Shown here piece after piece: positions 20,228 through 35,054 of a stretch of 64,000 nt of DNA. The translations under genes and the position numbers were made by a program. This DNA is from Ostrea edulis (taxonomy: Eukaryota). The first letter of the stretch is position 1; each line of letters begins with the position of its first letter. The notes beneath the pieces were generated by a model. It had not been told where the DNA came from, did no database searches, and saw nothing but the letters and a program-made list of their open reading frames with translations. The stretch is taken from the NCBI RefSeq assembly GCF_947568905.1, contig NC_079166.1, positions 23,126,001-23,190,000 of the forward strand, in the 5' to 3' direction.

Positions 20228-22252
20228 CAGACTCATGAAAACCTTCTACCTTCACATTTACAGGAAAACGAAGCCATTCAGTAGACCTACGGTTACTGAA
20301 AGATAACTGAATGATATAGGTCTGCTATTCAGTAATTATTTCAGACCTTTCAGTTAACTTTCATTCAACTGAATGGTACCATTTTATGCGGTGATTCCAA
20401 TTTCATTAGAACTCGTTTGACGTCTAGATATTCTTTGTAGGGAAGTCTGCTTACAAGGATAACAACACAATTCATAAGATGGACATTTTATCTAAGAATA
20501 TCATACTATGTGTTGGTTTTTGTTTTGTTTTAAATATAAAACTAATCATTACCAAAACCTCTTACAAACGTCATGATTTACTATACACAGCGTAATAATT
20601 TTCCATCTTCCACAACTTGGAAAAATAATGTTTTAGACCTATTTTGCTTCAATACACAACCCATTACATTATAGTCAATATATTAGAATAACTCATGCTA
20701 TAGTACCGATGGTCTTTCTCTCTGAAATGTTTTAACAACCAATAAGCAGTACATAGAGAAGAGAATAAATGTCACACACACCATTCCTATCGTGCCGTGG
20801 AGTAGACCAGATCTTCTGTCGTTTTTAAATTTAGTCCTCCCTAACATCTCTTCATCACAGAGAACGTCTAAAATAGTTAATACAGAAAATGGCATCTTCA
20901 ATGTAAGATATTACAATAAAACGAACAATTAAATGAAAGATGGTCAATGAAACGTCATAGCTGTCATCAAAACACTGCTCAACGCTCGGTCATTCGCTAA
21001 AATATTATCACATCGCAATGTTTAAGGGATTTCAATTCGATCCATGGAAGAAAATAAGACGAGATAAACTAACGTGCACCGGACTACCAAAAAGAATTAA
21101 ACTTCAATAAAATTTGCTAAAGATAGACAGAAGGAACCATTTGCAAATCCACTGTAGTGAGTAAGCGAGAATAATAGCAAATATATACATTTGTACATCA
21201 TTATCAAAAAGTGGGGGTCAACCAATATACCCCACTCTGCATGTAAATTTGATGGACAATCAACGTTATCCAAAAGTAAGGGATAGCCTCCACTTTCCAA
21301 TTCTGCGTGACTATTAATTCTTTTTAAAAGATTGTGAAAAGTCAAGCCCTTGTGGAAAAAATTCTGTGCACTGGGAAATAAATGTGAGATGTTAACATCG
21401 CTTGTTTTTAATGCCAACAAGCTTTGAATGTGAAACAGCATGGCTACTCAAATAAGAATAAACTTCCAATTACTAAAAATTGTATATGTATAAAGTATGG
21501 GGTTGCAATATCAATTCTTGGAGTGTATAATACAGGGATCCGCCTGCAACATGATATGCACATAAATGCATGGTGTAATCAAGAATAACAATGTATTTGG
21601 TAAAATGAAAAGTTTGAAATTTAGAGTGTCTTATCAGAATTCAGCTTTATATCCGGCGGATAACGCTTGTGATATTTTGATCAGTATGATTAATGATCGA
21701 ATGAAAACAGATCAAGTACTTGCTGAATAGATTCTTTCCGAAATGATACCACATTCAAATTTTCTCTTCAGCCATATTATCTAGGGAAAACCACTTTCTG
21801 AACAGTCTATCCGCTCTGTCAACACCCAAAACATTACGTTGGTCCCCACATTTAATAATCATTTAATGAGGCCACCTTTCCTTTATCAACATATCAGTAT
21901 TTAATGGAGCTTTCATGAACCGTTTCGTTCACTGATTCTTTTTTCTTTTTTGCAATGGAAACCAATGTTAACTATTTTGAACTTAACGAAGCTTTAATGA
22001 ATCTTTAAAGATGCATATGCTCCAATTTTCATACTAATTTTATATAAAAATATTATTACTACGGTATTCTATGAATAAAAATACCTAAAAAACTCTATTA
22101 AACATGTATTCAAAAATCTATGGTTTTAAAGATATAAATGAAAATATTTTCAAAAGACAGTCTGTCTTTTTGAAACTCTGTCTCTCCGAAAGAAGCCGAA
22201 TGCTGACCACGTGACCGTCTTATTAGCATATCGCGCGATAAACAAATCAAAA

Positions 22253-25200
22253 ATGGCGGAAGACGAAGTAAGAGAAAAGAAAGCGAAAAAAAGAGGAGGG
22301 AGAGTAGCCACTCTGACAACATCAGAGAGAAAAAGAAGGAAGAAGGAGTACAACCAGAAACTGGCAGGAAGTAGAATTTACATTGGAGGAGCAATTGAGA
22401 AGTGGAAAAGTCTTCAACAACAGACGAAAACGAAGACGGACGAAGAAATGGCGACAATGTTGCTGGAACGGTAAAGAAATTATTGAGTCTTTCTCATACT
22501 TTTATATGTCTGTAAAATATGAAGTGGTGTAAAGGAAAAGTTTGCGGTATATTATATTATTATGTAGTCCTACCGTGTTTCATAACATGCGCGCTAAGCG
22601 AGAAAGGGGGACAAATGGCAAATTGCAATGTAAAATGTATCCCCGACCTCTTTGAAGTCAGCACTAAAAATTTGCTTTGAGTTGATGACCTTGATTTTCA
22701 ATACTCGGGGTGGGTTGGGGGGGGGGTCACCCGTCGTACACACACATTTTGAAAAACGACAAGTCTTGCGATGACTGAATGCTCAACAATCAGCTGATAA
22801 GATGTTGATGGTGATTATTCATGATACAGTAATAATTTTTCAGATTTGAAAATGAAGCAGCGTTTAAAGAACCCCAGAGCGTCCACACCTCTATGACCAT
22901 GAAAACTTCTACACCAGCAGCTTCTTCCATCATATCAAGATTAAAAAACAAAGAATATGACAGAACACCATCCATGTCAGAGATATCTGCTGATTCAGAA
23001 CAGTGAGTTTCTTCTTAAAGACCCATCTCATGACCGTACGGTCAGTGAAAATGTAGGCGGAGCCTAATCTAAACAGATGTTATTTACCTGGAGTGGCCAG
23101 GGTCTACTAAGGTGTTAATTGCTATATCCCATGGCACTCAAAGAAATACACAGAGGCAGAACATGGTAGAAATCACCTGTCCATGCTTTTTTATAGTTTT
23201 GATATACACAGGACCTGTCTCAGTGACCTCTGCAGAGTTTCTGTGGTCATGGTGTTTGAATAATGGTTGTATTCCTAAGGGTAGCTGACACACATTTTAC
23301 ACCCACCCCTCTTTCTCTCTCTCTGTCATTGACTCAATGAATAATTTCTGTTATAAATATAGAGGTATCATAAATTGATGACATAAATTATTTCAATAGG
23401 TTACAAGTTTTAAAACTTATTGTGCAAATTATTGTTTAATTTCTGATTGTGTAATTTATAATACATGTACAGGTATATAAAGGGGGGAAATTACAATTAT
23501 ATTGAAATTGCATTGTTCAGGGGCCTTTTTAAAAACAATTGAATTACAAGAAAACAGCAGTTGTGGACAGGTCATTTGCTATCAAAACTCAGGTATACTG
23601 GGCTTCCTCAAGATCTAAAGAATGCCTGTAGATACTGGCTGTTATTGTTATCAAAACACCTCTCTGGGGGTAGCCCCAGACCACAGTGTCTGCAGATGTC
23701 ACTCCACCTGAGATCTATTGTTAAATGTTTGATTGGCAGGCAGCTTACAATTTGGGGGTGTCAAATTAAAATTGGGTCTTTAAATTTTTATAAGATATTT
23801 GAATCTGCATTGTTCTGGTGATCACCATTTAGATACACAAGTATCTGAAATGTCCCATCAGACAGAGTTTGAATTCATTGTAATTTTTTATTTTCCTTCA
23901 CTGTTGTACATCTTCCATAGTGCCCAACTATTACATAAACAATGTAATGAAATTACCTCCTTTACTTTGAGGAATTAATTAATCAAATTAACAATTATAT
24001 TCAATGTTAGTAGTTTCAAAAATTTATTATAAAAAAAATATCATACAAGTAATTTGGCAATTAGATTTTATCCTGATGAGATTTTTTTACCTGGGTTTTG
24101 TAACTTTGGAGTGCAGTAAACAGTTTACAACACCTGTCATCCCTGACTTTGTTGTTTCAAATAAGTTTTGGGGTTTGGTATTGTTTTGTTCAGAGTACTG
24201 TTAATTGTCAGTGTGTCCCTAAATGAACAGATTGAATCAATCATTCCTCACTTGAGGGCATATGCTGCCCATCCAGGTAAGGTGACCCAAGTGTCCATGA
24301 GTAGTTATTTTAGCAATTAACAAATATGGACAGAGTATTTATTTGAGGACAATGATACACAAATAACAGATATGTGATATATCCTTTATAATACAGTGTA
24401 TGTATTTTAAATTCTTATACATACTGAGTAGTTTATTCCATTCATCCATAAGTTTTTGTAGAATAACAAACAAGGTAGATTGTAAATTATTCAAAAGTAA
24501 TTGAAATATAATTGGAATTATATGATATCTTTCAAAGTTATTAATTTTAAAAATTACGATTACCTGTAAATGAACAAATGCTCAATGAACATTTCTACCA
24601 ATACACAATTTCCGAGTTGCCCAATAGTTCTTTCCCTTTGTGGGTACAATTGCTTATCACTGCCTTCATAATTTGCCTAAAGGCCGATTATCAGACATTA
24701 TGCAACCACCCAAACTGCTGGGACACACACTATTAGTAAGTTTATTAGTATTTGATAATAAAATAGCTCAACAAAAATCGATAATAACCATTTTTCTTTG
24801 ATTAAAAATTGCTCGTGCAGAGGAGGAAATAAAAAAATGATTTCATGTTTAATTGATGACCTAATTCAAACAAATAGTGTTCTTGATATGGTCAGTTAAT
24901 GTATAACAACTGCTGATATAAACAAAATTTACACTTTCATTACTTTTATCCGTATTTACATAGCTACTCAGCACTGTCTATAGTGTATGTATACATCTTG
25001 TACCCACTCAAGCGTTCAACAGAACACTGAACGTACCTCCATCACAAAAGAGCTGATATCTCGGAAGTTGTGTATTACATTTACTGTTTTTTCAATGACC
25101 TCATTCTTAATCTTGGCATGGTTCAGATAAGCAAAATTTCTTTCATTGTAGAGAACCTATGTCAGGAGTGGAGGAATTGCAAGTTTCCGGTCCTGAAGAT

Positions 25201-28200
25201 CCAGGGTATGAACAGTATTTTTTCTTTAATGAATTCAATACATACCATAGAAAATAATTCATATCTTGTGTTTTTATTCAACTTTTACCTTCAGTACTTC
25301 ATATTCTTTTTTTCCCACTAGTACTAGAAAAAAGATTACAAATATGAAACCTACTGCAGAAGCTACACCATCTAGCCGTTCTCGGAAACCAAAGAAGTGG
25401 TCAGATTCATTTTGTGATCCTTTGAAGTAAGAATTTTGTGCATCCACTATTAGATATATAAAATATAATGAAGTATACATTATGCATACTACATCTTTTT
25501 ACATTACTTCAACTTTGTGGACTAAGACTGAATACTTTTATATTGAATAAAACTCTTCCTGTGAAGAAATTACCCTATTTACTCTTAAATGCTGGGTTTG
25601 CACATTGTTAAATTTTATACTTCAAGTCTTGAATGTTGTACGAACATATATGAAAGTATATGAAACTTAGAGAAGTATATTTAATTTGTTTACATATATG
25701 AACCCCCACCCCCAAAGTCTTAAGTGTGCCATGTGCATGAATAGAACACATCTTGTATGTTGTAGCTTGTCCATTGACATCTCAGTACAAGACTCAGATT
25801 TAGAGGCAGTAGACTCAGAAGAGGATGACCCAAACTACCAGCCAAGTTTTGATGTCACAGCTATTCTGTAAGTATATGACAGTTTTCACATTAGGTTCAT
25901 AATTTTAATTTACACCCATGATATGTAAATATTTATTTATTTATTAGATGAAATGAACTTTTCTGATCACTTTTGTTTGTCCATCTTTTCAGAAACTTTG
26001 CTCATAACTTGCTCATAACTTGAATAGTTAGTGATAGGATTTCATATTTCATATGCACATTCCCTGTGAATAGGTACCAAAGTTCTTTACCAATTTATCT
26101 GGACCTTAGAGTTTAAACTACTTTTAAGAAAACTTAACCAAATCAATATTTTCTGACCTTAGGACTTTTGTATTTTGTATATAGATTTTTTATGGCAAGA
26201 TCTTTCAGGTGATACCATATTTGACCTTTTGACCTTGGAGTTTAACTTTTTAACAACCTGATCTACTCAATAACATCTGAGTTATTTTGTTAAACTTTCA
26301 TATTTTTATATAGATTTGTGGTAAGACCCATAATTTCTCACCACGATCTATGACCTTGACCTCTAGAACAGCAAGGTCATGCTAATCATATTAATGAGAC
26401 AGCTAAAGGACATACAAGAAACTCTAAAAAATGTAATACACAAAAATTAAGATTTAGAATTTATTTCATAAATAAGCTAAGACTTCCCAATGACATATTG
26501 AATATCCTCTATCTATTGAACATGTATTTGATATTGGAAAGACATGAATAAATGTTTCTTTAGAGTGTTATTTACATGAAATTAATTTATGTGTTAGACC
26601 AGATGATGTGAACAGTATGGCAGAAGATGTAGCCTATGAAGAGGTTGAGTTTGGGTTTGAGTTGCCTGGTAATGATGGTCAACTAGAAGGTCCAGATATT
26701 GAGATGGGAGTTCTTCCAGGCGTCCACAGAGTGTCCACAGAGGGAGAATGCAGAGATTTGACTACGGCTTTGAAATGTATTGCATTCGTTGATCAGATAA
26801 AGGAGTTGACCAAGATACATGTACCACGATGCACAGAACAATCATGCAATAAACCTACACAGATGAAGGAGTCTTATGTTGGATCTGCATTGCACTTGAA
26901 ATGGGTATTTATCAGTAATATTTTAGCTTTTAGTATTATTTAGCATATAAATGGAATTTGTTACTTGATCATATCAGTATTAAAAGATACATTTTTGTAA
27001 AGGAAATCTTAATTAGTTTTGGTTATTCATTGATTTTGTTACACACTGGACATTGGCAGTATATTCATTATTAAATGTATTTTTAGATTTGTGAAGAAGG
27101 CCATGTAAGTCACCACTGGTGTTCACAGCCTCAGTTAAACCGACGGCTACATAGTGGAGACTTCCTAATTTGTGGTTCCATCCTGACCTCTGGAAATAAT
27201 TATGGAAAATTGGCATTGTGGGCAGAGATGTTAAAACTGAAATTTCCCTCTGCAGACCAGTTTCATAGGATTTGCAGTACATATGTTATCCCAACCATTG
27301 ACAAATTCTGGAGTGATCATCGTCAAGAGCTGTTGAATGACTTCAAGGACAAAGAAGTTGTAGTTTTAGGTAAGAGTTTTCAAATTTCAATTGCCATTCA
27401 TTTCTTATCGAATGTCTGTGTATTTGTTTATACAACCCCTTTGGCTTGTACCTTTTTCAGGTGATGGCAGAAATGATTCACCAGGCCATTGTGCACAGTA
27501 TTGTTCATACACGTTAATGGACAACGAGACCAAAAAAATCCTGACCATTGAACCCCTAGATAAAAGGATGACTGATAGGAAGTCTGTCAACATGGAAAAA
27601 GCAGGATTTCAAATCGCCCTCAACGACCTGTTAGAAAAAGATATAAAGGTGGTAGAGGTGGTTACTGATGCACACCTGGGAATTGGTTCAGTAATGAGTA
27701 AGTATTTCATATAAATTTTCTCTATGGACTAGCAATTGATAAAATGTAAATGATTCTCTTTTCATAGCATTTACAACTTTTATTTCTATTTTCAGAGAAA
27801 GATTACCCAAATATACACCATTCCCATGATATATGGCATGTGGCAAAGAATTTGGGGAAGAAGATTTTGAAGGTTAGTAAATATAATGTTTTGGTGAGAG
27901 ATTAATTATCTTATTTCATAGTGATTCTCAAAATCATGAACAGTTTTAATCAGTAATTCATATTTTAGGTGGCTCAGAAGAAGGGGAATAATATATTATT
28001 GGATTGGTGTAAAGACATCATTAACCACTTTTGGTTTTCATGTCGTCGTGCAGAGTCGTATGAGGAATTCATGGTAAGACATATTGTGGAAAGTTAATGC
28101 ACATGTATTTGTCAATATTACAATTGAAGAAGCAAGTTCAATGTATACAAATTTGCATGGACTTTTTCCATTGGAAAAAGCAAACTTCTTCATGTACTGC

Positions 28201-30704
28201 ATATCAGTGTGTGCATTTTATTTCCAGGGCATATGGCGAAGTGTATTGCACCACATTACAGACACACATGAGTGGATTCTATCTCATGGGGGTGTTAACC
28301 ACTGTCTTCATGGAGAATTAGGTGAAGAGGAAAGGACAAAACCATGGTTGTCACCGACGAAGCATGCCCATGTATTAAAAGACCTAGCAGCTGTGGTGTT
28401 AAACAAAAGACTTTTGAACAATGTTGGATACTATTTGAGATTCAGGTAAAATGGAGTAATGAAATAATAGAATAGACTATTTTCTGTCTAAATAATTTGC
28501 TTGGGTTGCTTGAAAGGAGGGGGCATATTGGTTTGCATTTACTGGTCACTCAGTAGATGAGGTATTGTAAATACTGTACTGTTTTCCCCACTATTTATGC
28601 TTCTGTAGACAAGGTGTTTTTTTTGTAAAGGTGGTCCTCTGTTGTTTAAACAAGTATTGACTGCACAGGTCCTTGAAGATGACCTTAAAACCACTAAGTG
28701 TGGCATGCTAAAGAACTCTCACTGCTCAATGGCCGTAAGTGCTGAGCATAGGCCTAAATTTTGCAGCCCTTCACCAGTATTGATGACTCCTCCATATGGG
28801 AGAAAATTTCTTGAGAGGGATGTTGAACAAGATACAATCAATCAACAGTTGGGTTTCTGGATAATAACTCCAAAAATTTACAATCTAATAAAATGAAACT
28901 TTGATATATTGTTGGGTACCAGGTAAGGAAGAGCCCTATTGATTTTGGAGAAAAATGGTCAAAGGTCATGGTCACAGTGACCGAAAAAAGAATAAAAATT
29001 TCAGAAAGATTTGGTTTCCGGATGACAACTCAGAAAGTTTAAATCCGAATCAAATGATACTTTAAGATATTATTATGTACCAAGTAAGGAAGACCCCTAT
29101 TTACTTTGGAGAAAACAGATCAAAGGTAAAGGTCACAGTGACCGAAAATAGATTTAAAATTTCAACAACAAAAATGGTTTCCGAAGGATAACTCGAAAGT
29201 TGTTAATTTGAATGAAATGAAACTTGGATATAGTGTTGGATACCAGCAAAGCAAGACCACTAGTTTTTTGGGAGAAAAAAGGTCGAGGTCACAGTTACCG
29301 AAAATAGATTGAAATTTCAGACAAATATGGTTTCTGGACAGTAACTCGAAAACTTTAAAACTGAAATCAGTTCTTCACAATTGTAAATATGCCACATCAT
29401 TCCTGACTTTACAATATCCCATGCAACTCGACTCATGCACCCCTGGGTGCATATATTGATTTTTAACTTATCGATAAGTAGTCTGCTATTCCAATTTTCA
29501 AATTTTGGTATGAAGCAATTTCTGTAGGAGGAATGTAAATTTCAGCCTGTGGGCCTCTTGTCTAAAAATGTATCAATGGTACATGCATGTTGATGACGAA
29601 CATTGTTATTACATGAGAGTTCAATTTCAGAAGTACAGCTGAACTGGAAGGATTCCATCAGCACATTCTGATGTACTGTTCAAAACGACACGCCTATACC
29701 CCACCAGTCTATCGTGCCAGAAACAGACTTGCAGCACTGGATCACAATATGAACTCAGACCGTCCAGTGCAGAAAAACAAAGATGGAAAAATAAGGTAAT
29801 CTTAGGGATGTACAAGTATCCGGTCTGTCAAAAAAAAGGGGGGGGGGCGTACCACTATGGTATACTGTTGTCTGTCTGTTCAGACATTGTAGGTAAATTG
29901 TAGAATGAACCATAAGCTCCAGGATCTTTCAACTTGGTACATTTGATCATCTTGAGGAGAGGAAGATTTCCATTGTTTTTCAAGGTCAAGGTCGTATAAG
30001 TTGATAGGAGAATCTTGTAAGCAGGATACAGACTACACCGTTGGGGCTAGGACCATCAAACACGATATACATACACCTTATGCAGAGGATGTCTATTATT
30101 CCTCAAGGTCAACGTTATGGTTTCACTTAGTAGAAAAACTTTGTTTTCATTTTCCAAAATTTGGTCAGAACCTCCCTCTCAGAGAAATACAAAATTGTTC
30201 ACATTTTAACATGATTGATGCACTGTGACCTACTTTAGGGATTAAGTAGGTTTAAAGAGTGTTATGGATTTCTTCTTGTCTTACATACAAATATTGCACT
30301 GAAGGTCCAATAGACGTATATTGTACTGTTTGCTGTACGCCTTGTTTATGAGATCATTGATGCAATATGAATTGATTGAATGATTACAACAATGTTTTAT
30401 TATACCAAATACATGATGTTGAGCATTCTCTAATTATGTGACTTTTTTATTTAATAGGTACCATCGTGTATTTAATAAAAAAAAAAGTGGGAGATGGACA
30501 GTGCATGCCATGAGGGAAAGGAAAAAATATGAGTATATGTCATCTCTATTGTGCGATGCTGTAAAATTGAGGATTAATGACAGAGTGGGCATGAAAAAAA
30601 CTGTGTTGGCACCAGATGATCCCAGATTAATTGCAAAACATCTGGCACCCGTAGAAACACCTCCAACTGAAGAACTTGTGTTGCAGCAGAAATCACGATT
30701 TTGA
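22253..30704 (+). CDS. DDE transposase of Kolobok/Mutator-like fold (723 aa, 12 exons)
   Basis: Exons 22253-22470, 22844-23002, 25152-25205, 25766-25867, 26598-26904, 27087-27369, 27461-27697, 27796-27872, 27969-28073, 28228-28445, 29631-29795 and 30458-30704. Total 2172 nt, all GT-AG, no stops. Motifs GDGRNDSPGH (D), VTDAH (D), HDIWH (DxxH) and STAELEGFH (E). Exons 3-4 are the least certain. Confidence 0.85.
25930..26400. repeat. Degenerate oyster-type interspersed repeat (ttttctgatcac... gaccttgacct motifs) in a transposase intron
   Basis: Motifs similar to those at 29830-30110, 30860-31000 and 31180-31820. Boundaries are approximate. Confidence 0.45.
28501..29460 (+). mobile_element. Helentron-associated (HINE/pearl-like) element with three ~162-bp internal repeats
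   Basis: Repeats start at 28894, 29055 and 29218 (ggtcaaaggtcaaggtcacagtgacc core). Subterminal inverted motif gggttgcttg / catgcaactc. 3' hairpin tgcacccctgggtgca. Confidence 0.65.
28668..28843 (+). mobile_element. 5'-truncated SINE fragment nested in the HINE-like element
   Basis: Matches the body and (CAAT)n tail of the SINEs at 51741-52383. Confidence 0.8.
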
Positions 30705-31179
30705 ACTGCCACGGAAATTAAATGTGAATTTTATATTGTAAAGAAATGTGAAATTATACTTAGTATAGTACATGTATTGCAGCAATATCTAATTGAAATT
30801 ATATCATGTAAAATCTACATCTGTCTCAATCTTGTAACAAACCCATTTTACACATTGCAACTTTTCTGATCACATGTTGTCCATCTTCCTTGTAAACTTT
30901 ACTCTAGACCAATATATGGGGATTTACATTAGTTCAAATGAAAGGCCCTGTCCACCCCTGAAGAACTAATGGGATAGAAAAAATGAAACTTGGGTAAAAC
31001 CACCTTGACATTGTTTACATTCTATGATGTTTAAATCGGATCAAAGTTTTCCCCAAGTATATTTAGGATATAATTTCTTTGGATTGCCAAACGAGTTGTT
31101 TATCACTATGAAAAAAAAATAACCAGTTCTATTTCTTTTCAACCAATGGGGGTAGGGGTTTGATTCATGTACTTTACAT

Positions 31180-31820
31180 GTATATGCCTCATGAGTAGGC
31201 CTTTCATTCTTATCTTCAAAGAAATGGGGCATACTGCTTTGCACCTGGCGGTTGGTCAGTAGATCACGTTGGCTCAAAATCATGAGAACCATTCAATTGA
31301 TCGTTATGATATTTCGTGTGTGGGTTGGTTATGAGAGAAGGACCCCTATTGTTTATCAGGTCAAGGGTCAATCTACCCTGAACATAAGAAGACACTGTTC
31401 ACTCAATATCTTGAGAACGCTTTGCTTGACAGACATCAAACGTAGTACACTGTTACATCTTCAGGAGAAGATAACCCCTATTGATTTTGAGGTCACATGG
31501 TCAAACTGGACTTGGGAATATATTGTTCACTCATGTGAGAATCCTTTGCTCAACAGACATCAAAATTTGTACATCTTCAGAAGATGACCCCTAATGATTT
31601 GAGGTCAAACTGGACATAGTAATATATTGTCTCCTATATTTTCAGAATTATTTGTTTGATCGACACCAAACTTGGTACAGCATACGGAGCACATAACCCC
31701 TATTGAATTTTAGGTCATGTGGTCAATCCACTCCTGGCATAGGAAAACATTGCTCATTATTTTGAATTGGTGATACTATCAATAAAATGATGCATGTGTA
31801 TAACCCTTTCCAATTTTGCA
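31180..31820 (+). repeat. Degenerate HINE-like element with internal tandem units
   Basis: Repeated acccctattgattttgaggtca units. The 3' end ttgcaccattggggc resembles the hairpin end of 28501-29460. Confidence 0.5.
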
Positions 31821-32636
31821 CCATTGGGGCATATGAGTTTTACAAACATCTCTGGTGTTTGAAGACTTCATCTAGTGACCTAATATTCAATACTGCATAT
31901 TTGATATTTCCATGGGAGATAGGGCTTTGATACTTCAAATAAAAAGTGCTACTGACCAGACCTTTATTTTGGTACCAAGGCCTTTGACCTTGCGGCCATG
32001 GACTTCTACCCACTTTTGACTCAAAGGAAATACAAGTAGTCATTTGCCACCCCCTGTTGAGGTTTGTCTTCTCAAGGAAAGCAAGGCCTATAATAGGCAA
32101 GCAGTTTTAGGTAGTGCAGATGACATGATCACTTTGTTTAGTCAAAGGTCAAAAGTTACCAAGACTTATGATTTGTATAACATTTCAGAAACGGGATGAT
32201 TATGCTTGGAGCATTCATACTATGAGAGGATAATGAAAATGGTCATAAAACAATGTCATACCTTGCCTGTCAACTTCATTGATTAATTAACATTTACATT
32301 GTAACAACACCAAAATTTAAAAGACCTAGAAAATTTATTCTTGTTACAACAATTTCTTCAATCTTTTACCACAACAGATTATTGATAAAGATATGAACAA
32401 TGTGTAAAAAATCAAAAGTGACTGATAATAGTTCCATTTTACTAAGATATAGGTAAATTTTTAAACATGGCTACGAGGATGTAAAAATATTTCAACTTCA
32501 TAGTTGCAATACCAAAAAAAAAAAAATCTAGGATATTTATAGAGAATAACAATATTGGACTAGCAGTATTAAAATAATATACAACTGGCTATCATAATTT
32601 TAAGGTTAGTATATATACAATTACATTTACAAACAC

Positions 32637-32667
<31 letters not shown>

Positions 32668-32681
32668 TTGGCTATGTACAT

Positions 32682-34471
32682 TTATATTCGCCCTGCAACA
32701 AATCCAGTGTATTGACCAAAAGGGTCAGGAAACTTGTCTCTAATAGACCAAACCGCGCAGGATGGAATGACCCGTCTGTCCCCTGCACCTAGTCTGCCAT
32801 AGGTCCACAAGATATACTGTCGGTACGCTTGGTGACGGTTGCCTTTTCTCTCGTCCACTTCATCATTGAAGACCAAAATGTCTCTCCTATATAGTCTGGC
32901 AAGGGCTAGCACAGCTTCATCGAGAATTAGCACCGAGAAGTCCTATAGAAGAAATTACATGTAGTTCTTTAGAATCTTTTTAGAAACATCGGTGTGATAA
33001 AGATGTGTTGTGTTGTAATGTGGTATGAAAATTATATTTCTAATTATCTCATGAGGAAGTAAATTGAAAGCAATATATATGTGAACTGACCAATACAAAA
33101 CTCAGCAATGATACAATCCATCTTCAAAATTCTTGTATACAATTTTAAAAAAAACAAAAAACTAAAAATGTTTACAAAGTATGTACTCTAATGATCACAC
33201 ATCTTACTGGTAAAAGAGTTATGCATTGCTCTTTCCCACAGCACACTTTCTCCCTTTCTGTTGGCATCTGCCGGCAATTTCCACAAACACACCAGTTTGG
33301 GCAAGTCCCGCCAGGTTGTGGGTGGTAGCCCCCTTGTTGGGTAGGAGGATGCATGATATCGTGAACTAGACCAGGTTGTTTTTCTGCCATCGTTAGGCAC
33401 AGTTCTCGAAGTTCATCCACCTCCATAATTGAAATGTGTTCCTACAATATAAATCATACATAAATGTGTAGATCTAATAGGGTATATGGCAATGTCATTT
33501 TTTCAGTAACTTGTATATTATTGTGTACAAATCTATTTTGCATATGTTTGTTGCTTACCCGTAAAACTTCACTCCTTCTATTGATTTGATCAAGGGCAAC
33601 TTCATCTCTTGATGGTCCTCCTCCTCTACCTCTTCCCCTGCCTCCTCTACCTCTCCCCCTGCCTCCTCTGCCTCTTCCTCGAACACCTCTCCCCCTTCCA
33701 CGGTTTCTGCCCCTACCTCTCACTTGACCTTGAACATCTATCTCTTCATCACTGCTCTGTATAGTTGTGGTACTAGAACTCTCCTGAAAATTGGCAAAAA
33801 GAGCCCATGTGATTATTATTTATTGGGTTGAGATAATAGGTGGGGTGAGGATTGTAAGGACAATGCTATAGAATTAGGTGGATAACAAGTGATTTTGAAT
33901 CTCCCATTCTACTATCACAAATTGGGCACATGGGTTTTAATGTGTATGTTGCTGGGAAGGGGTCATCCGGAAGAGAAGTAGTTTCTTTAAAAATATTTTA
34001 ATCAATGAATGCCCATACTTCACTAAATAATTTTTATTCAAAACTTTCCAACTTGCTTTAGACCCATTTTATTATACATGTACAACTGTCATTAGGTATG
34101 GGGGGGGGGGGGGGTATATATCTTTCATATATCCAAACATAACAAATGATGGCTATTTTCGAAAACGTATCCCCTCCCCCAATTATACGTGCCTGTGTCT
34201 CTAATTAATCAGACTAAAATCTGTAAAGTTCTAAAAATAAAATATAAACAAACAAGCGTGGCAAGACGTATGACAGACGCTATTTTTGGTAGAAGAGTTC
34301 AAGTCATTCATTTTGGATATTTTCAACCAATTCTTGGATATGTGCATATCTAATTAATAATTAGTGTTTTGCACATGATCTACTAAAACTAATTTAATCG
34401 GAATGGTTCTTATTCCAATATATACAAAAGATTACTCAAAGTGAAATAACGTCAATACTTACCGACGCCAT
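32682..34471 (-). CDS. KolX-like protein: RGG/RG tract plus P2X7 cytoplasmic-ballast-like Cys-rich domain (242 aa, 4 exons)
   Basis: Exons 34471-34463 (MAS), 33783-33559 (RG/RGG repeats), 33441-33208 (PNWCVCGNCRQMPTEREKVCCGKEQCIT) and 32942-32682 (RHQAYRQYILWTYGRLGAGDRRVIPSCAVWSIRDKFPDPFGQYTGF). Total 729 nt, all phase-0 GT-AG introns. Confidence 0.85.
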
Positions 34472-35054
34472 TGTTTTCTCTGTAATCACGTGTTTAAAAG
34501 GCGCGCGCTATGCATACATTATGCAAATAGGTTAACCGAAGATTTCCGAGAGTTAAATATTGGTCAGAAATGAAGAACTTATTGTGACCAATTTCTTTCT
34601 TTCGGGATGAAATCAATTAGTTTACGCTACATAACTTGTTATAAACCGCCATTATAGATACACTAACTATGTTACTTTGGAAAGGAAAAAAAATTGATTA
34701 CGAGTACGTATGTACCTTTAAGTATTAATACGATTTAGTCCAGGATGTTTGTTATAGTAAATCAAAATTCTTTTTTTTTTTTACCCCGTTAGATGGAAAA
34801 ATGACATTGTTGGTGAAGAAATTCATCAGAAGTACACATACAATGTATATCTCAATTAAAAACGTATTAAGCAAAACTGCATATCCTTACAACCAAATAT
34901 ATTATCACAGAGACTTTTGTCACATTTACATTCCATTTGACAATCAGCGCCGTAATTAGGATACCGGCAAGGTAGACTACAGGACGGTCCATAAAACCCA
35001 TGTGGACAACCATTTCCTAGATCTGGAAATATATGTTTTGTATTTATTATGTTA

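What the first reader, a model, noticed from the sequence alone, without database searches (positions are those of the whole stretch)
22009..34717. Intron-rich, coding-intact Kolobok-like element with eroded TIRs: active giant or domesticated gene pair?
Both ORFs are uninterrupted across 14 introns and the D-D-E residues are present. Yet the TIRs match only 8/11, and the introns and spacer have accumulated old, degenerate repeats. Intact coding sequence in a decaying non-coding frame suggests purifying selection, either on a long-lived mobile lineage or on a host-captured locus. A clean TTAA pair still brackets it.
Basis: partly seen in the sequence, partly recalled or inferred. Interest (0 to 1): 0.7.

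Follow-up and report, generated by a model that had tools for sequence, protein, structure and literature searches.

The report
Young two-gene Kolobok transposon in oyster
This 12.7-kb stretch is a young copy of an ordinary two-gene Kolobok "cut-and-paste" transposon in an oyster genome, not a domesticated gene pair, and it is notable only because it is the one copy found here in which both genes are still unbroken.

Summary
Three more full-length copies (99 %, ~96 %, ~91-95 % identical), at least nine left and nine right ends and a 1.3-kb deletion derivative all begin and end at the same bases. All are flanked by TTAA in unrelated DNA. One copy sits in a high-copy repeat whose nine other copies examined carry a single TTAA there, so TTAA is a true target-site duplication.

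The + strand gene has 13 exons and 756 codons. It is open, and RNA-like contigs support eight of its splice joints. It aligns colinearly with a large transposase family and shows the published Kolobok signature. The - strand gene (4 exons, 242 codons) is a KolX / P2X7-ballast protein.

These features match the published Kolobok "Kol0" lineage (Kojima & Bao 2022). The 8/11 terminal repeat is not eroded: both ends are conserved across copies and are the family's native ends. Domestication is refuted.

Both genes show purifying selection between copies (dN/dS 0.2-0.5), as expected for a family that stayed mobile. The other full-length copies are broken.

Verdict: a new member of a known kind. Whether the family is active now was not shown. 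The scan had already noted KolX-bearing Kolobok derivatives elsewhere in this genome.

The parts
22005..22008 (.). Left TTAA target-site duplication
   Evidence: Homology between copies starts here. TTAA is single in paralogous empty sites of copy c2.
22009..22030 (+). Left terminus, starting AG (5'-RR). It is the imperfect terminal inverted repeat, 8/11 against the right end.
   Evidence: Conserved in 9 further left ends, down to ~83 % overall identity, with one substitution in one end.
22009..34717 (+). Complete Kolobok (Kol0-type) element, 12,709 bp
   Evidence: Full-length alignment to copies on C3:56.5 Mb, C5:61.7 Mb and C7:30.3 Mb. Read depth is ~10x that of the flank.
22253..22470 (+). 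Transposase exon 1 (ATG at 22253); basic N-terminal region
   Evidence: GT..AG joint 22470>22844 in RNA-like contigs. N-terminus resembles those of homologues P0009, P0116 and P0122.
22844..23002 (+). Transposase exon 2
   Evidence: Joints; frame.
23019..23779 (.). Nested 761-bp MITE in intron 2. It has its own TTAA duplication (23015-18 and 23780-83) and AGACCCA...TGGGTCT ends, so it is itself Kolobok-type.
   Evidence: Absent from copies c3 and c4, which read a single TTAA there. Read depth is ~350-550 against ~2 in the flank, and a 23014>23780 joint is seen in reads.
24606..25073 (.). Second nested MITE-like insertion in intron 2 (ends CACAAYTTCCGAG, inverted)
   Evidence: Absent from copy c4, present in c2 and c3. 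High read depth.
25152..25205 (+). Transposase exon 3
25328..25426 (+). Transposase exon 4
25766..25867 (+). Transposase exon 5
26598..26904 (+). Transposase exon 6 (Cys-rich region upstream of the catalytic core)
   Evidence: aligned to homologues.
27087..27369 (+). Transposase exon 7 (W.C..GH...W.SQP ... SGNN block; ends in the G of GDG)
27461..27697 (+). Transposase exon 8: the (G)DGRNDSPG motif (first D) and the VVTDAH motif (second D)
   Evidence: 1107 database relatives at E<=0.001, best 5.5e-33. Motifs are conserved in the alignment. The same pattern occurs in Kolobok_1_AP in Data S5 of PMC9587614.
27796..27872 (+). Transposase exon 9: HSHDIWH, the C/DxxH signature
   Evidence: A contig running past 27697 continues with letters that match 27796-27825. 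Alignment.
27969..28073 (+). Transposase exon 10
   Evidence: Homology plus canonical AG/GT sites and an open frame. No RNA evidence was obtained.
28228..28445 (+). Transposase exon 11 (His/Cys-rich block LHH..D.HEW...C.HG, between DxxH and E)
28849..29327 (.). Three degenerate tandem copies of ~160 bp in intron 11
29631..29795 (+). Transposase exon 12: STAELEGFH, holding the likely third catalytic residue E
   Evidence: 59-69 % identity to homologues.
30458..30704 (+). Transposase exon 13 with stop codon. It contains an A10 run at ~30477-30486 that keeps the frame.
   Evidence: The run is A8, A10 or A12 in seven copies.
30705..32681 (.). Spacer between the convergent 3' ends, with degenerate repeats at 31412-31726
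32682..32942 (-). KolX exon 4 with stop codon (C-terminal half of the ballast-like domain)
   Evidence: Pfam P2RX7_C 1.5e-18. Matches P2X7 residues 513-591 at E 6.8e-13.
33208..33441 (-). KolX exon 3 (the Cys cluster WCxCGxC...CC...CIT)
   Evidence: Pfam P2RX7_C 2e-6. Matches P2X7 residues 469-508. The motif agrees with the KolX alignment in Fig. S6 of PMC9587614.
33559..33783 (-). KolX exon 2 (acidic stretch followed by an RG/RGG-rich tract)
   Evidence: Open frame with AG/GT sites. 21-nt repeat at 33620-33678.
34463..34471 (-). KolX exon 1 (ATG GCG TCG followed by GTAAGT)
   Evidence: Inferred from the sequence; no RNA evidence.
34704..34717 (+). Right terminus, ending CT (YY-3')
   Evidence: The last ~14 bases are the same in 9 further right ends.
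34718..34721 (.). Right TTAA target-site duplication

Best explanation
The stretch is one recently inserted copy of an autonomous-type DNA transposon of the Kolobok superfamily, Kol0 lineage. It carries two convergent, intron-bearing genes. One is a DDE transposase with the C/DxxH signature (13 exons, 756 codons). The other is the accessory protein KolX, a zinc-cluster 'ballast' domain like the C-terminus of P2X7 (4 exons, 242 codons), here preceded by an RG-rich tract.

Inferred mechanism: both genes are transcribed from promoters just inside each end and spliced. The transposase binds the short imperfect AG...CT termini, cuts the element out and pastes it into a TTAA, which is thereby duplicated.

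Shown here: the TTAA duplication, conserved termini, multiple young copies, a deletion derivative, splicing of the transposase mRNA in a related oyster, open frames, and purifying selection between copies.

Inferred only: catalysis by the named D/D/E residues, the role of KolX (unknown in the literature), and activity at present.

The family kept moving while its introns picked up MITEs. Copy c4 has neither MITE, c3 has one, and c2 plus the window copy have both, so each enlarged version was transposed again.
For: Copies and ends:
- Four full-length copies on three chromosomes, with homology limits exactly at the TTAAs and unrelated flanks.
- At least 10 left and 10 right ends at >=89 % identity, plus hundreds of more distant terminal matches.
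- Read depth inside the element is ~10x that of the single-copy flank.
- Nine of nine paralogous empty sites read ...gcgaa TTAA a[ct]tcttcg..., against TTAA-element-TTAA in copy c2.
- A 1.3-kb internal-deletion derivative keeps both ends and the TTAAs.

Genes:
- Seven canonical GT..AG joints, plus an eighth shown by a contig that runs on into the next exon. Exon contig depth is 250-650 against 1-14 in unique intron sequence.
- Frames are open exon by exon.
- The transposase exons are colinear with full-length homologues and share the motifs GDGRxDSPG, TDAH, HSxDxWH and LExF. The same pattern occurs in Kolobok_1_AP in the published Kolobok alignment.
- KolX: Pfam P2RX7_C and P2X7 residues 469-591.
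- The amphioxus homologue P0009 has the same convergent P2RX7_C neighbour.

Selection: dN/dS is 0.20-0.53 for the transposase and 0.21-0.30 for KolX. Exon divergence is about half of non-coding divergence.

Literature definition of Kolobok and Kol0: TTAA duplication, 5'-RR...YY-3' termini, transposase plus KolX (PMC9587614).
Against: - No Pfam model hits the transposase exons. Homologues give only sub-threshold MULE/Mutator hits, so superfamily assignment rests on motifs, architecture and target site, not on a curated model or a tree with named Repbase families.
- Exons 10-13 of the transposase and all KolX joints lack RNA evidence.
- The RNA-like runs are from a related organism and are labelled RNA only by guess, although exon/intron depth and spliced joints argue for RNA.
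- No empty allele of this particular insertion was seen, and present-day activity is not shown.
- Four of the seven copies that hold the last exon carry an out-of-frame A8 run.
Confidence: 0.9

Rival explanations
1. A domesticated (host-captured) transposase/KolX gene pair, with the TTAA and terminal repeat there by chance.
For: Both ORFs are open and dN/dS is below 1. An 8/11 terminal repeat beside a TTAA pair is expected by chance many times per window. Kolobok domestication is known in Xenopus (PMC6004289).
Against: The same 12.7-kb unit, introns and spacer included, recurs at 91-99 % identity in unrelated flanks on other chromosomes, ending at the same bases. A TTAA duplication is shown against empty sites. 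There is a deletion derivative with both ends. Non-coding divergence to the nearest copy is only 0.6 %.
Confidence: 0.02
2. A piggyBac-type element. piggyBac also targets TTAA, and a few piggyBac families carry a KolX-like gene.
For: TTAA duplication. PMC9587614 notes piggyBac families that encode KolX-like proteins.
Against: The termini are AG...CT, which PMC9587614 gives as the Kolobok state in contrast with piggyBac. The transposase shows the GDGxxDSPG / DxxH / LExF pattern of the Kolobok alignment, and neither the exons nor the homologues hit a piggyBac Pfam domain. This KolX keeps the Cys cluster that the piggyBac versions mostly lack.
Confidence: 0.02
3. A real Kolobok family that is now extinct. 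The window copy would be open only because it is young, and nothing moves any more.
For: Every other full-length copy has frameshifts or stops, or a 10.6-kb insertion in KolX intron 1. Only about 10 copies exist. No polymorphic empty allele was observed.
Against: Non-coding divergence to copy c2 is 0.6 %, and the two share a nested MITE that must have been carried along by transposition. The transposase is transcribed and correctly spliced at high depth in a related oyster. Both ORFs are open here.
Confidence: 0.4
4. The copies arose by segmental duplication rather than transposition.
For: Two left ends on C4, 190 kb apart, have identical flanks, so some copies were duplicated along with their surroundings.
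Against: For all the other copies, similarity stops precisely at the TTAA on both sides and the flanks are unrelated. The empty-site comparison shows a clean TTAA duplication.
Confidence: 0.01

Closest known systems
Kolobok superfamily, Kol0 lineage (type Kolobok-1_XT; also Kolobok-1_BF and Kolobok-1_AP), described by Kapitonov & Jurka 2007 and Kojima & Bao 2022 (PMC9587614)
   Same: TTAA target-site duplication, 5'-AG...CT-3' termini, short imperfect terminal repeats, a DDE transposase with the C/DxxH signature and a His/Cys block before the last E, and a second gene encoding KolX (P2X7-ballast-like). The amphioxus homologue shows the same convergent gene pair.
   Different: This is an oyster family. 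The paper's list of hosts for Kol0 names vertebrates, annelids, cnidarians and sponges, although Kolobok as a whole is known in molluscs. Other differences are the 12 + 3 introns, an RG-rich tract in front of the KolX domain, and nested MITEs carried along in intron 2.
Xenopus XKol full-length elements (Hikosaka et al. 2018, PMC6004289)
   Same: ~12.2 kb long, AG-starting imperfect terminal repeats, intact TTAA on both sides, few copies, and proposed recent activity.
   Different: A different phylum. Many Xenopus XKol transposase genes are domesticated, whereas the copy here is a mobile-element copy.
KolobokP of bivalves (PMC9587614)
   Same: Same superfamily and same host group (oysters).
   Different: [quoted passage not shown] Neither is present here: there are no long terminal direct repeats and the accessory gene is KolX.
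piggyBac
   Same: TTAA-specific cut-and-paste insertion.
   Different: A different transposase family and different termini. See the rival explanation.
P2X7 receptor cytoplasmic ballast domain; zebrafish Nanor
   Same: The KolX exons align to P2X7 residues 469-591, with the Cys cluster conserved.
   Different: A stand-alone transposon protein with no channel part. The literature reads P2X7's ballast as derived from KolX, not the reverse.

Membership tests
Kolobok superfamily | [quoted passage not shown] | tested here: met
   TTAA flanks both ends of all copies examined but one, whose right-hand site reads TTAC. Nine of nine paralogous empty sites have a single TTAA.
Kolobok superfamily | Termini 5'-RR ... 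YY-3' (in contrast with piggyBac) | tested here: met
   5'-AG...CT-3' in every end aligned; one left end starts GG, which is still RR. Definition from PMC9587614.
Kolobok superfamily | [quoted passage not shown] | tested here: met
   The order GDGRNDSPG - VVTDAH - HSHDIWH - STAELEGFH is found across exons 7/8, 8, 9 and 12. The columns are conserved among 12 full-length homologues, and the pattern is shared with Kolobok_1_AP in Data S5. The catalytic role of the residues is inferred, not assayed.
Kolobok superfamily | Zinc-finger motif downstream of C/DxxH and upstream of the last E (all lineages except Kolobok1) | tested here: inconclusive
   A conserved His/Cys block (NHFW..C; LHH..xH.W; C.HG) lies in exons 10-11. 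I did not map it residue by residue onto the published motif, and I did not model the structure.
Kolobok superfamily | Phylogenetic placement of the transposase among named Kolobok families | not tested
Kol0 lineage | A second gene encoding KolX (cytoplasmic-ballast fold, conserved Cys cluster) | tested here: met
   Pfam P2RX7_C at 1.5e-18 and 2e-6. P2X7 residues 469-508 and 513-591. Motifs agree with Fig. S6.
Autonomous (currently active) element | Both ORFs intact and expressed; insertion polymorphism or demonstrated transposition | tested here: inconclusive
   ORFs are open. Transposase mRNA is spliced in a related oyster. There is a 99 % identical sister copy. No polymorphism or activity data were obtained.
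Domesticated transposase gene | Single-copy orthologous locus without transposon ends | tested here: not met
   Multi-copy, with conserved ends and target-site duplications.
piggyBac | piggyBac-type transposase domain and termini | tested here: not met
   No such Pfam hit on the exons or the homologues. Termini are AG...CT.
KolobokP | [quoted passage not shown] | tested here: not met
   No terminal direct repeats were found by the repeat finder. The accessory gene is KolX.

The most novel reading that the evidence does not exclude
The window copy may be the only transposase-competent source of a Kolobok family that is still moving in oysters. It would then be a candidate for the first experimentally tractable Kolobok, a TTAA-specific cut-and-paste system with a KolX partner whose function could then be tested. 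In addition, the poly-A run in the last transposase exon (A8, A10 or A12 among copies, with only A10 in frame) may act as a slippage-prone switch that sets how much full-length transposase is made, rather than being simple decay or assembly noise.
Probability: 0.15. Interest if true: 0.55.

Novelty: new member of a known kind. Interest (0 to 1): 0.3.

Why it matters
It also gives a cleanly annotated Kol0-type Kolobok with an RNA-supported exon model, a proven TTAA duplication, a dated series of copies and a matching 1.3-kb non-autonomous derivative.

As far as I know, no Kolobok transposase has been shown active in an assay. An open two-gene copy with a natural mini-element would therefore be a reasonable starting point for testing Kolobok transposition and the unknown role of KolX, the presumed ancestor of the P2X7 ballast domain. 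Beyond that it is ordinary transposon biology.

Tried and rejected
- **Pfam on ten ORF pieces:** no hit for any transposase exon. Full-length homologues gave only sub-threshold MULE/Mutator hits.
- **Terminal repeat as evidence:** rejected after simulation. 0.3 % of random TTAA pairs reach 8/11, and with 535 TTAAs in the window hundreds of pairs would pass.
- **Shared subterminal motifs between the two ends:** only three 8-mers were shared, at about chance level.
- **Empty allele of this insertion:** not obtained. The left flank is single-copy and was covered only ~1-2.6x by the two raw-read runs, no such loose end was listed, and read laying allows one call of at most 6 kb while the element is 12.7 kb. 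Paralogous empty sites of copy c2 were used instead.
- **Alternative acceptor after the A-run in exon 13:** considered, because it would make the run intronic. Rejected as the main form, because homologues conserve the residues encoded upstream of the run (R-x-x-R-x-F-N-K-K).
- **Long terminal direct repeats (KolobokP):** none found.
- Frames were checked exon by exon with their split codons. All searches used single exons by reference or natural database proteins. No structure prediction was run.
Full report
**Setting.** The window is G000:C3:23126001-23190000 of an 895-Mb genome. The public runs that hold the stretch are labelled oyster or oyster metagenome. GC content is about 35 % throughout, with no compositional break at the element.

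**Observation.** TTAA lies at 22005-22008 and 34718-34721. The 11 bases inside them match 8/11 in inverted orientation. That match alone is worthless as evidence: 0.3 % of random TTAA pairs in this window do as well, and the window has 535 TTAAs.

The boundaries are nevertheless exactly right.
- A 1.25-kb internal probe found three further near-identical places: C3:56.5 Mb at 100 %, C5:61.7 Mb at 98 % and C7:30.3 Mb at 96 %.
- After fetching 20 kb around each, homology to all three starts at window 22005. For the two copies that were fetched to their end, it stops at 34721.
- The flanks outside the TTAAs are unrelated.
- Searches with the terminal 246 bp of each end found about ten left and ten right ends at 89 % identity or more, plus hundreds of weaker terminal matches.
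- In fifteen more ends that I fetched, the termini recur next to TTAA and unrelated DNA. One left end starts GG instead of AG, and one right-hand TTAA reads TTAC.
- Raw-read depth is ~15-20 inside the element against ~1-2.6 in the left flank. That gives roughly ten copies at 90 % identity or more.

**Proof of transposition.** Copy c2 (C3:56506512-56529812) lies inside a young high-copy repeat. In nine of nine other copies of that repeat, the sequence runs straight through a single TTAA. In c2 the same two flanks are separated by TTAA-element-TTAA. TTAA is therefore a target-site duplication, and the element proper is AG...CT.

A 1.3-kb derivative on C7 joins window-equivalent 22005-22431 directly to 33806-34721 and has TTAA on both sides. 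This is the usual internal-deletion, non-autonomous product of a cut-and-paste element.

**Gene 1 (+ strand).** Contigs of two runs from a related organism are labelled RNA only by guess. They have a depth of 250-650 on exons and 1-14 on unique intron sequence. They show seven canonical GT..AG joints, and a contig that runs past 27697 continues with letters matching 27796-27825.
- Exons 10-13 were placed by tblastn with twelve or more full-length database homologues and by canonical splice sites.
- The model has 13 exons and 2271 nt, which is 756 codons plus a stop. It is open when checked exon by exon with the split codons.
- Exon 8 alone finds 1107 relatives at E<=0.001, the best at 5.5e-33.
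- The exons align colinearly with full-length homologues. The conserved blocks are GDGRxDSPG..AQYC, EVxTDAH, HSxDxWHxAKN, a His/Cys block, and RxTxxLExF.
[quoted passage not shown] Kolobok_1_AP in their Data S5 shows the same string of motifs.
- Pfam has no model for this family. Only sub-threshold MULE/Mutator hits appear on homologues, which fits the reported kinship of Kolobok with MuDR, P and hAT.

**Gene 2 (- strand).** This gene has four exons: 34471-34463, 33783-33559, 33441-33208 and 32942-32682. They total 242 codons and all sites are AG/GT.
- Exons 3 and 4 hit Pfam P2RX7_C at 2e-6 and 1.5e-18.
- They align to P2X7 residues 469-508 and 513-591.
- The WCxCGxC...CC...CIT and AYRQ...W..G.LG...R.IPSC motifs are those of KolX in the paper's Fig. 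S6.
- Exon 2 adds an acidic stretch and an RG-rich tract.
- The Kol0 lineage is defined by exactly this pair, transposase plus KolX.
- As an independent check, the amphioxus homologue P0009 (782 aa, multi-exon) is followed by a convergent gene with P2RX7_C.

**State of the copies.**

| Copy | Identity to window | Transposase | KolX |
|---|---|---|---|
| c2 | 99 % | Only the A-run difference in the last exon | Exons identical; intron 1 carries a 10.6-kb foreign element |
| c3 | ~96 % | Three further frameshifts and one stop | Three frameshifts |
| c4 | 91-95 % | Three further frameshifts and one stop | Open |

The poly-A run in exon 13 is A10 in the window copy and in one truncated copy. It is A8 in four copies and A12 in one. 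Only A10 is in frame here. Homologues read ...FNKK-SGRW, which would correspond to A7. So, within what the searches returned, the window copy is the only one with a complete open transposase. Homopolymer assembly error cannot be excluded.

**Selection and age.**

| Copy compared with window | Non-coding divergence | Exon divergence | Transposase dN/dS | KolX dN/dS |
|---|---|---|---|---|
| c2 | 0.6 % | 0.2 % | 0.53 | not computable (no differences) |
| c3 | 2.5 % | 1.5 % | 0.37 | 0.30 |
| c4 | 6.0 % | 3.1 % | 0.20 | 0.21 |

This is the pattern expected when copies descend from successive functional source elements. It does not point to host selection.

Diverged elements of a related family in the same genome (about 67 % DNA identity) keep the same exon boundaries for exons 7-11. 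The introns are therefore old in this lineage.

**History written in the introns.** Intron 2 holds two discrete insertions.
- A 761-bp MITE at 23019-23779 has its own TTAA duplication and AGACCCA...TGGGTCT ends, so it is Kolobok-type. It is present only in the window copy and c2.
- A ~470-bp MITE-like element at ~24606-25073 is absent from c4. Both have read depths in the hundreds.

The order is therefore c4 (neither), c3 (one), then c2 and the window copy (both). The enlarged element was transposed again after each gain.

**Comparison with what is known.** Everything tested fits the published Kol0 Kolobok.
- Full-length Xenopus elements are ~12.2 kb long, with imperfect AG-starting terminal repeats and TTAA on both sides. 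Neither the size nor the 'weak' terminal repeat is therefore unusual.
- Kolobok is known in molluscs, and KolobokP is common in oysters, but the present element lacks KolobokP's long terminal direct repeats and nuclease.
- The scan had already noted KolX-bearing, transposase-less Kolobok derivatives elsewhere in this genome and the KolX gene of this very element.

**Verdict.** The 'eroded TIR' and 'domesticated pair' readings are rejected. This is a new member of a known kind. Current activity is plausible but unproven.

Noticed in passing
window 30477-30486, and the same place in L043-L048: The poly-A run in the last transposase exon is 10 long here and in one truncated copy, 8 in four copies and 12 in one. 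Only A10 keeps the frame, and homologues suggest an ancestral A7 (FNKK-SGRW). It could be a hypermutable homopolymer, an assembly error or slippage-dependent expression.
   Followed up: partly
G000:C3:56518926-56529518 (L012:5926-10000 plus L049:1-6518): Copy c2 carries a nested 10.6-kb element in KolX intron 1. It has ~50-bp imperfect terminal inverted repeats starting CAATCTAATTAAAATT and an apparent 9-bp target duplication (AAGATTACT). Its ORF pieces hit the DEAD/RecQ-like helicase domain (5.5e-9) and DUF6589 (1.5e-16).
   Followed up: partly
L011:3212-3515 and L033-L041: The host sequence of copy c2 is a very young, very abundant repeat: 979 candidate places, many at 98-99 % identity. It contains an internal inverted segment and was not classified.
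   Followed up: no
window 23019-23779: A 761-bp Kolobok-type MITE (TTAA duplication, AGACCCA/TGGGTCT ends) with read depth of ~350-550, which implies hundreds of genomic copies. It is far more successful than the autonomous family it sits in, and its ends differ from those of the host element.
   Followed up: partly
G000:C4:87257939-87258184 and C4:87067526-87067771 (L017, L018): Two left ends of the family, 190 kb apart, have identical flanks. This looks like a segmental duplication that includes a copy. No right ends were found nearby.
   Followed up: no
window 22209-22214 and 34487-34492: A CACGTG (E-box) motif lies ~40 bp upstream of the transposase ATG and ~16-21 bp upstream of the KolX ATG. 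This may be a shared promoter element or chance.
   Followed up: no
run X19 record 1 (laid on window 22005-22314): In the related organism, a contig at depth 134 crosses the left end into a different flank. The family therefore sits at another site there, and that end is covered by read-through transcription or by DNA present in the library.
   Followed up: no
proteins P0091 and P0092: Two homologues of ~1030-1080 aa carry the Kolobok transposase core followed by an array of C2H2 zinc fingers. They may be domesticated fusions or merged gene models in another genome.
   Followed up: no
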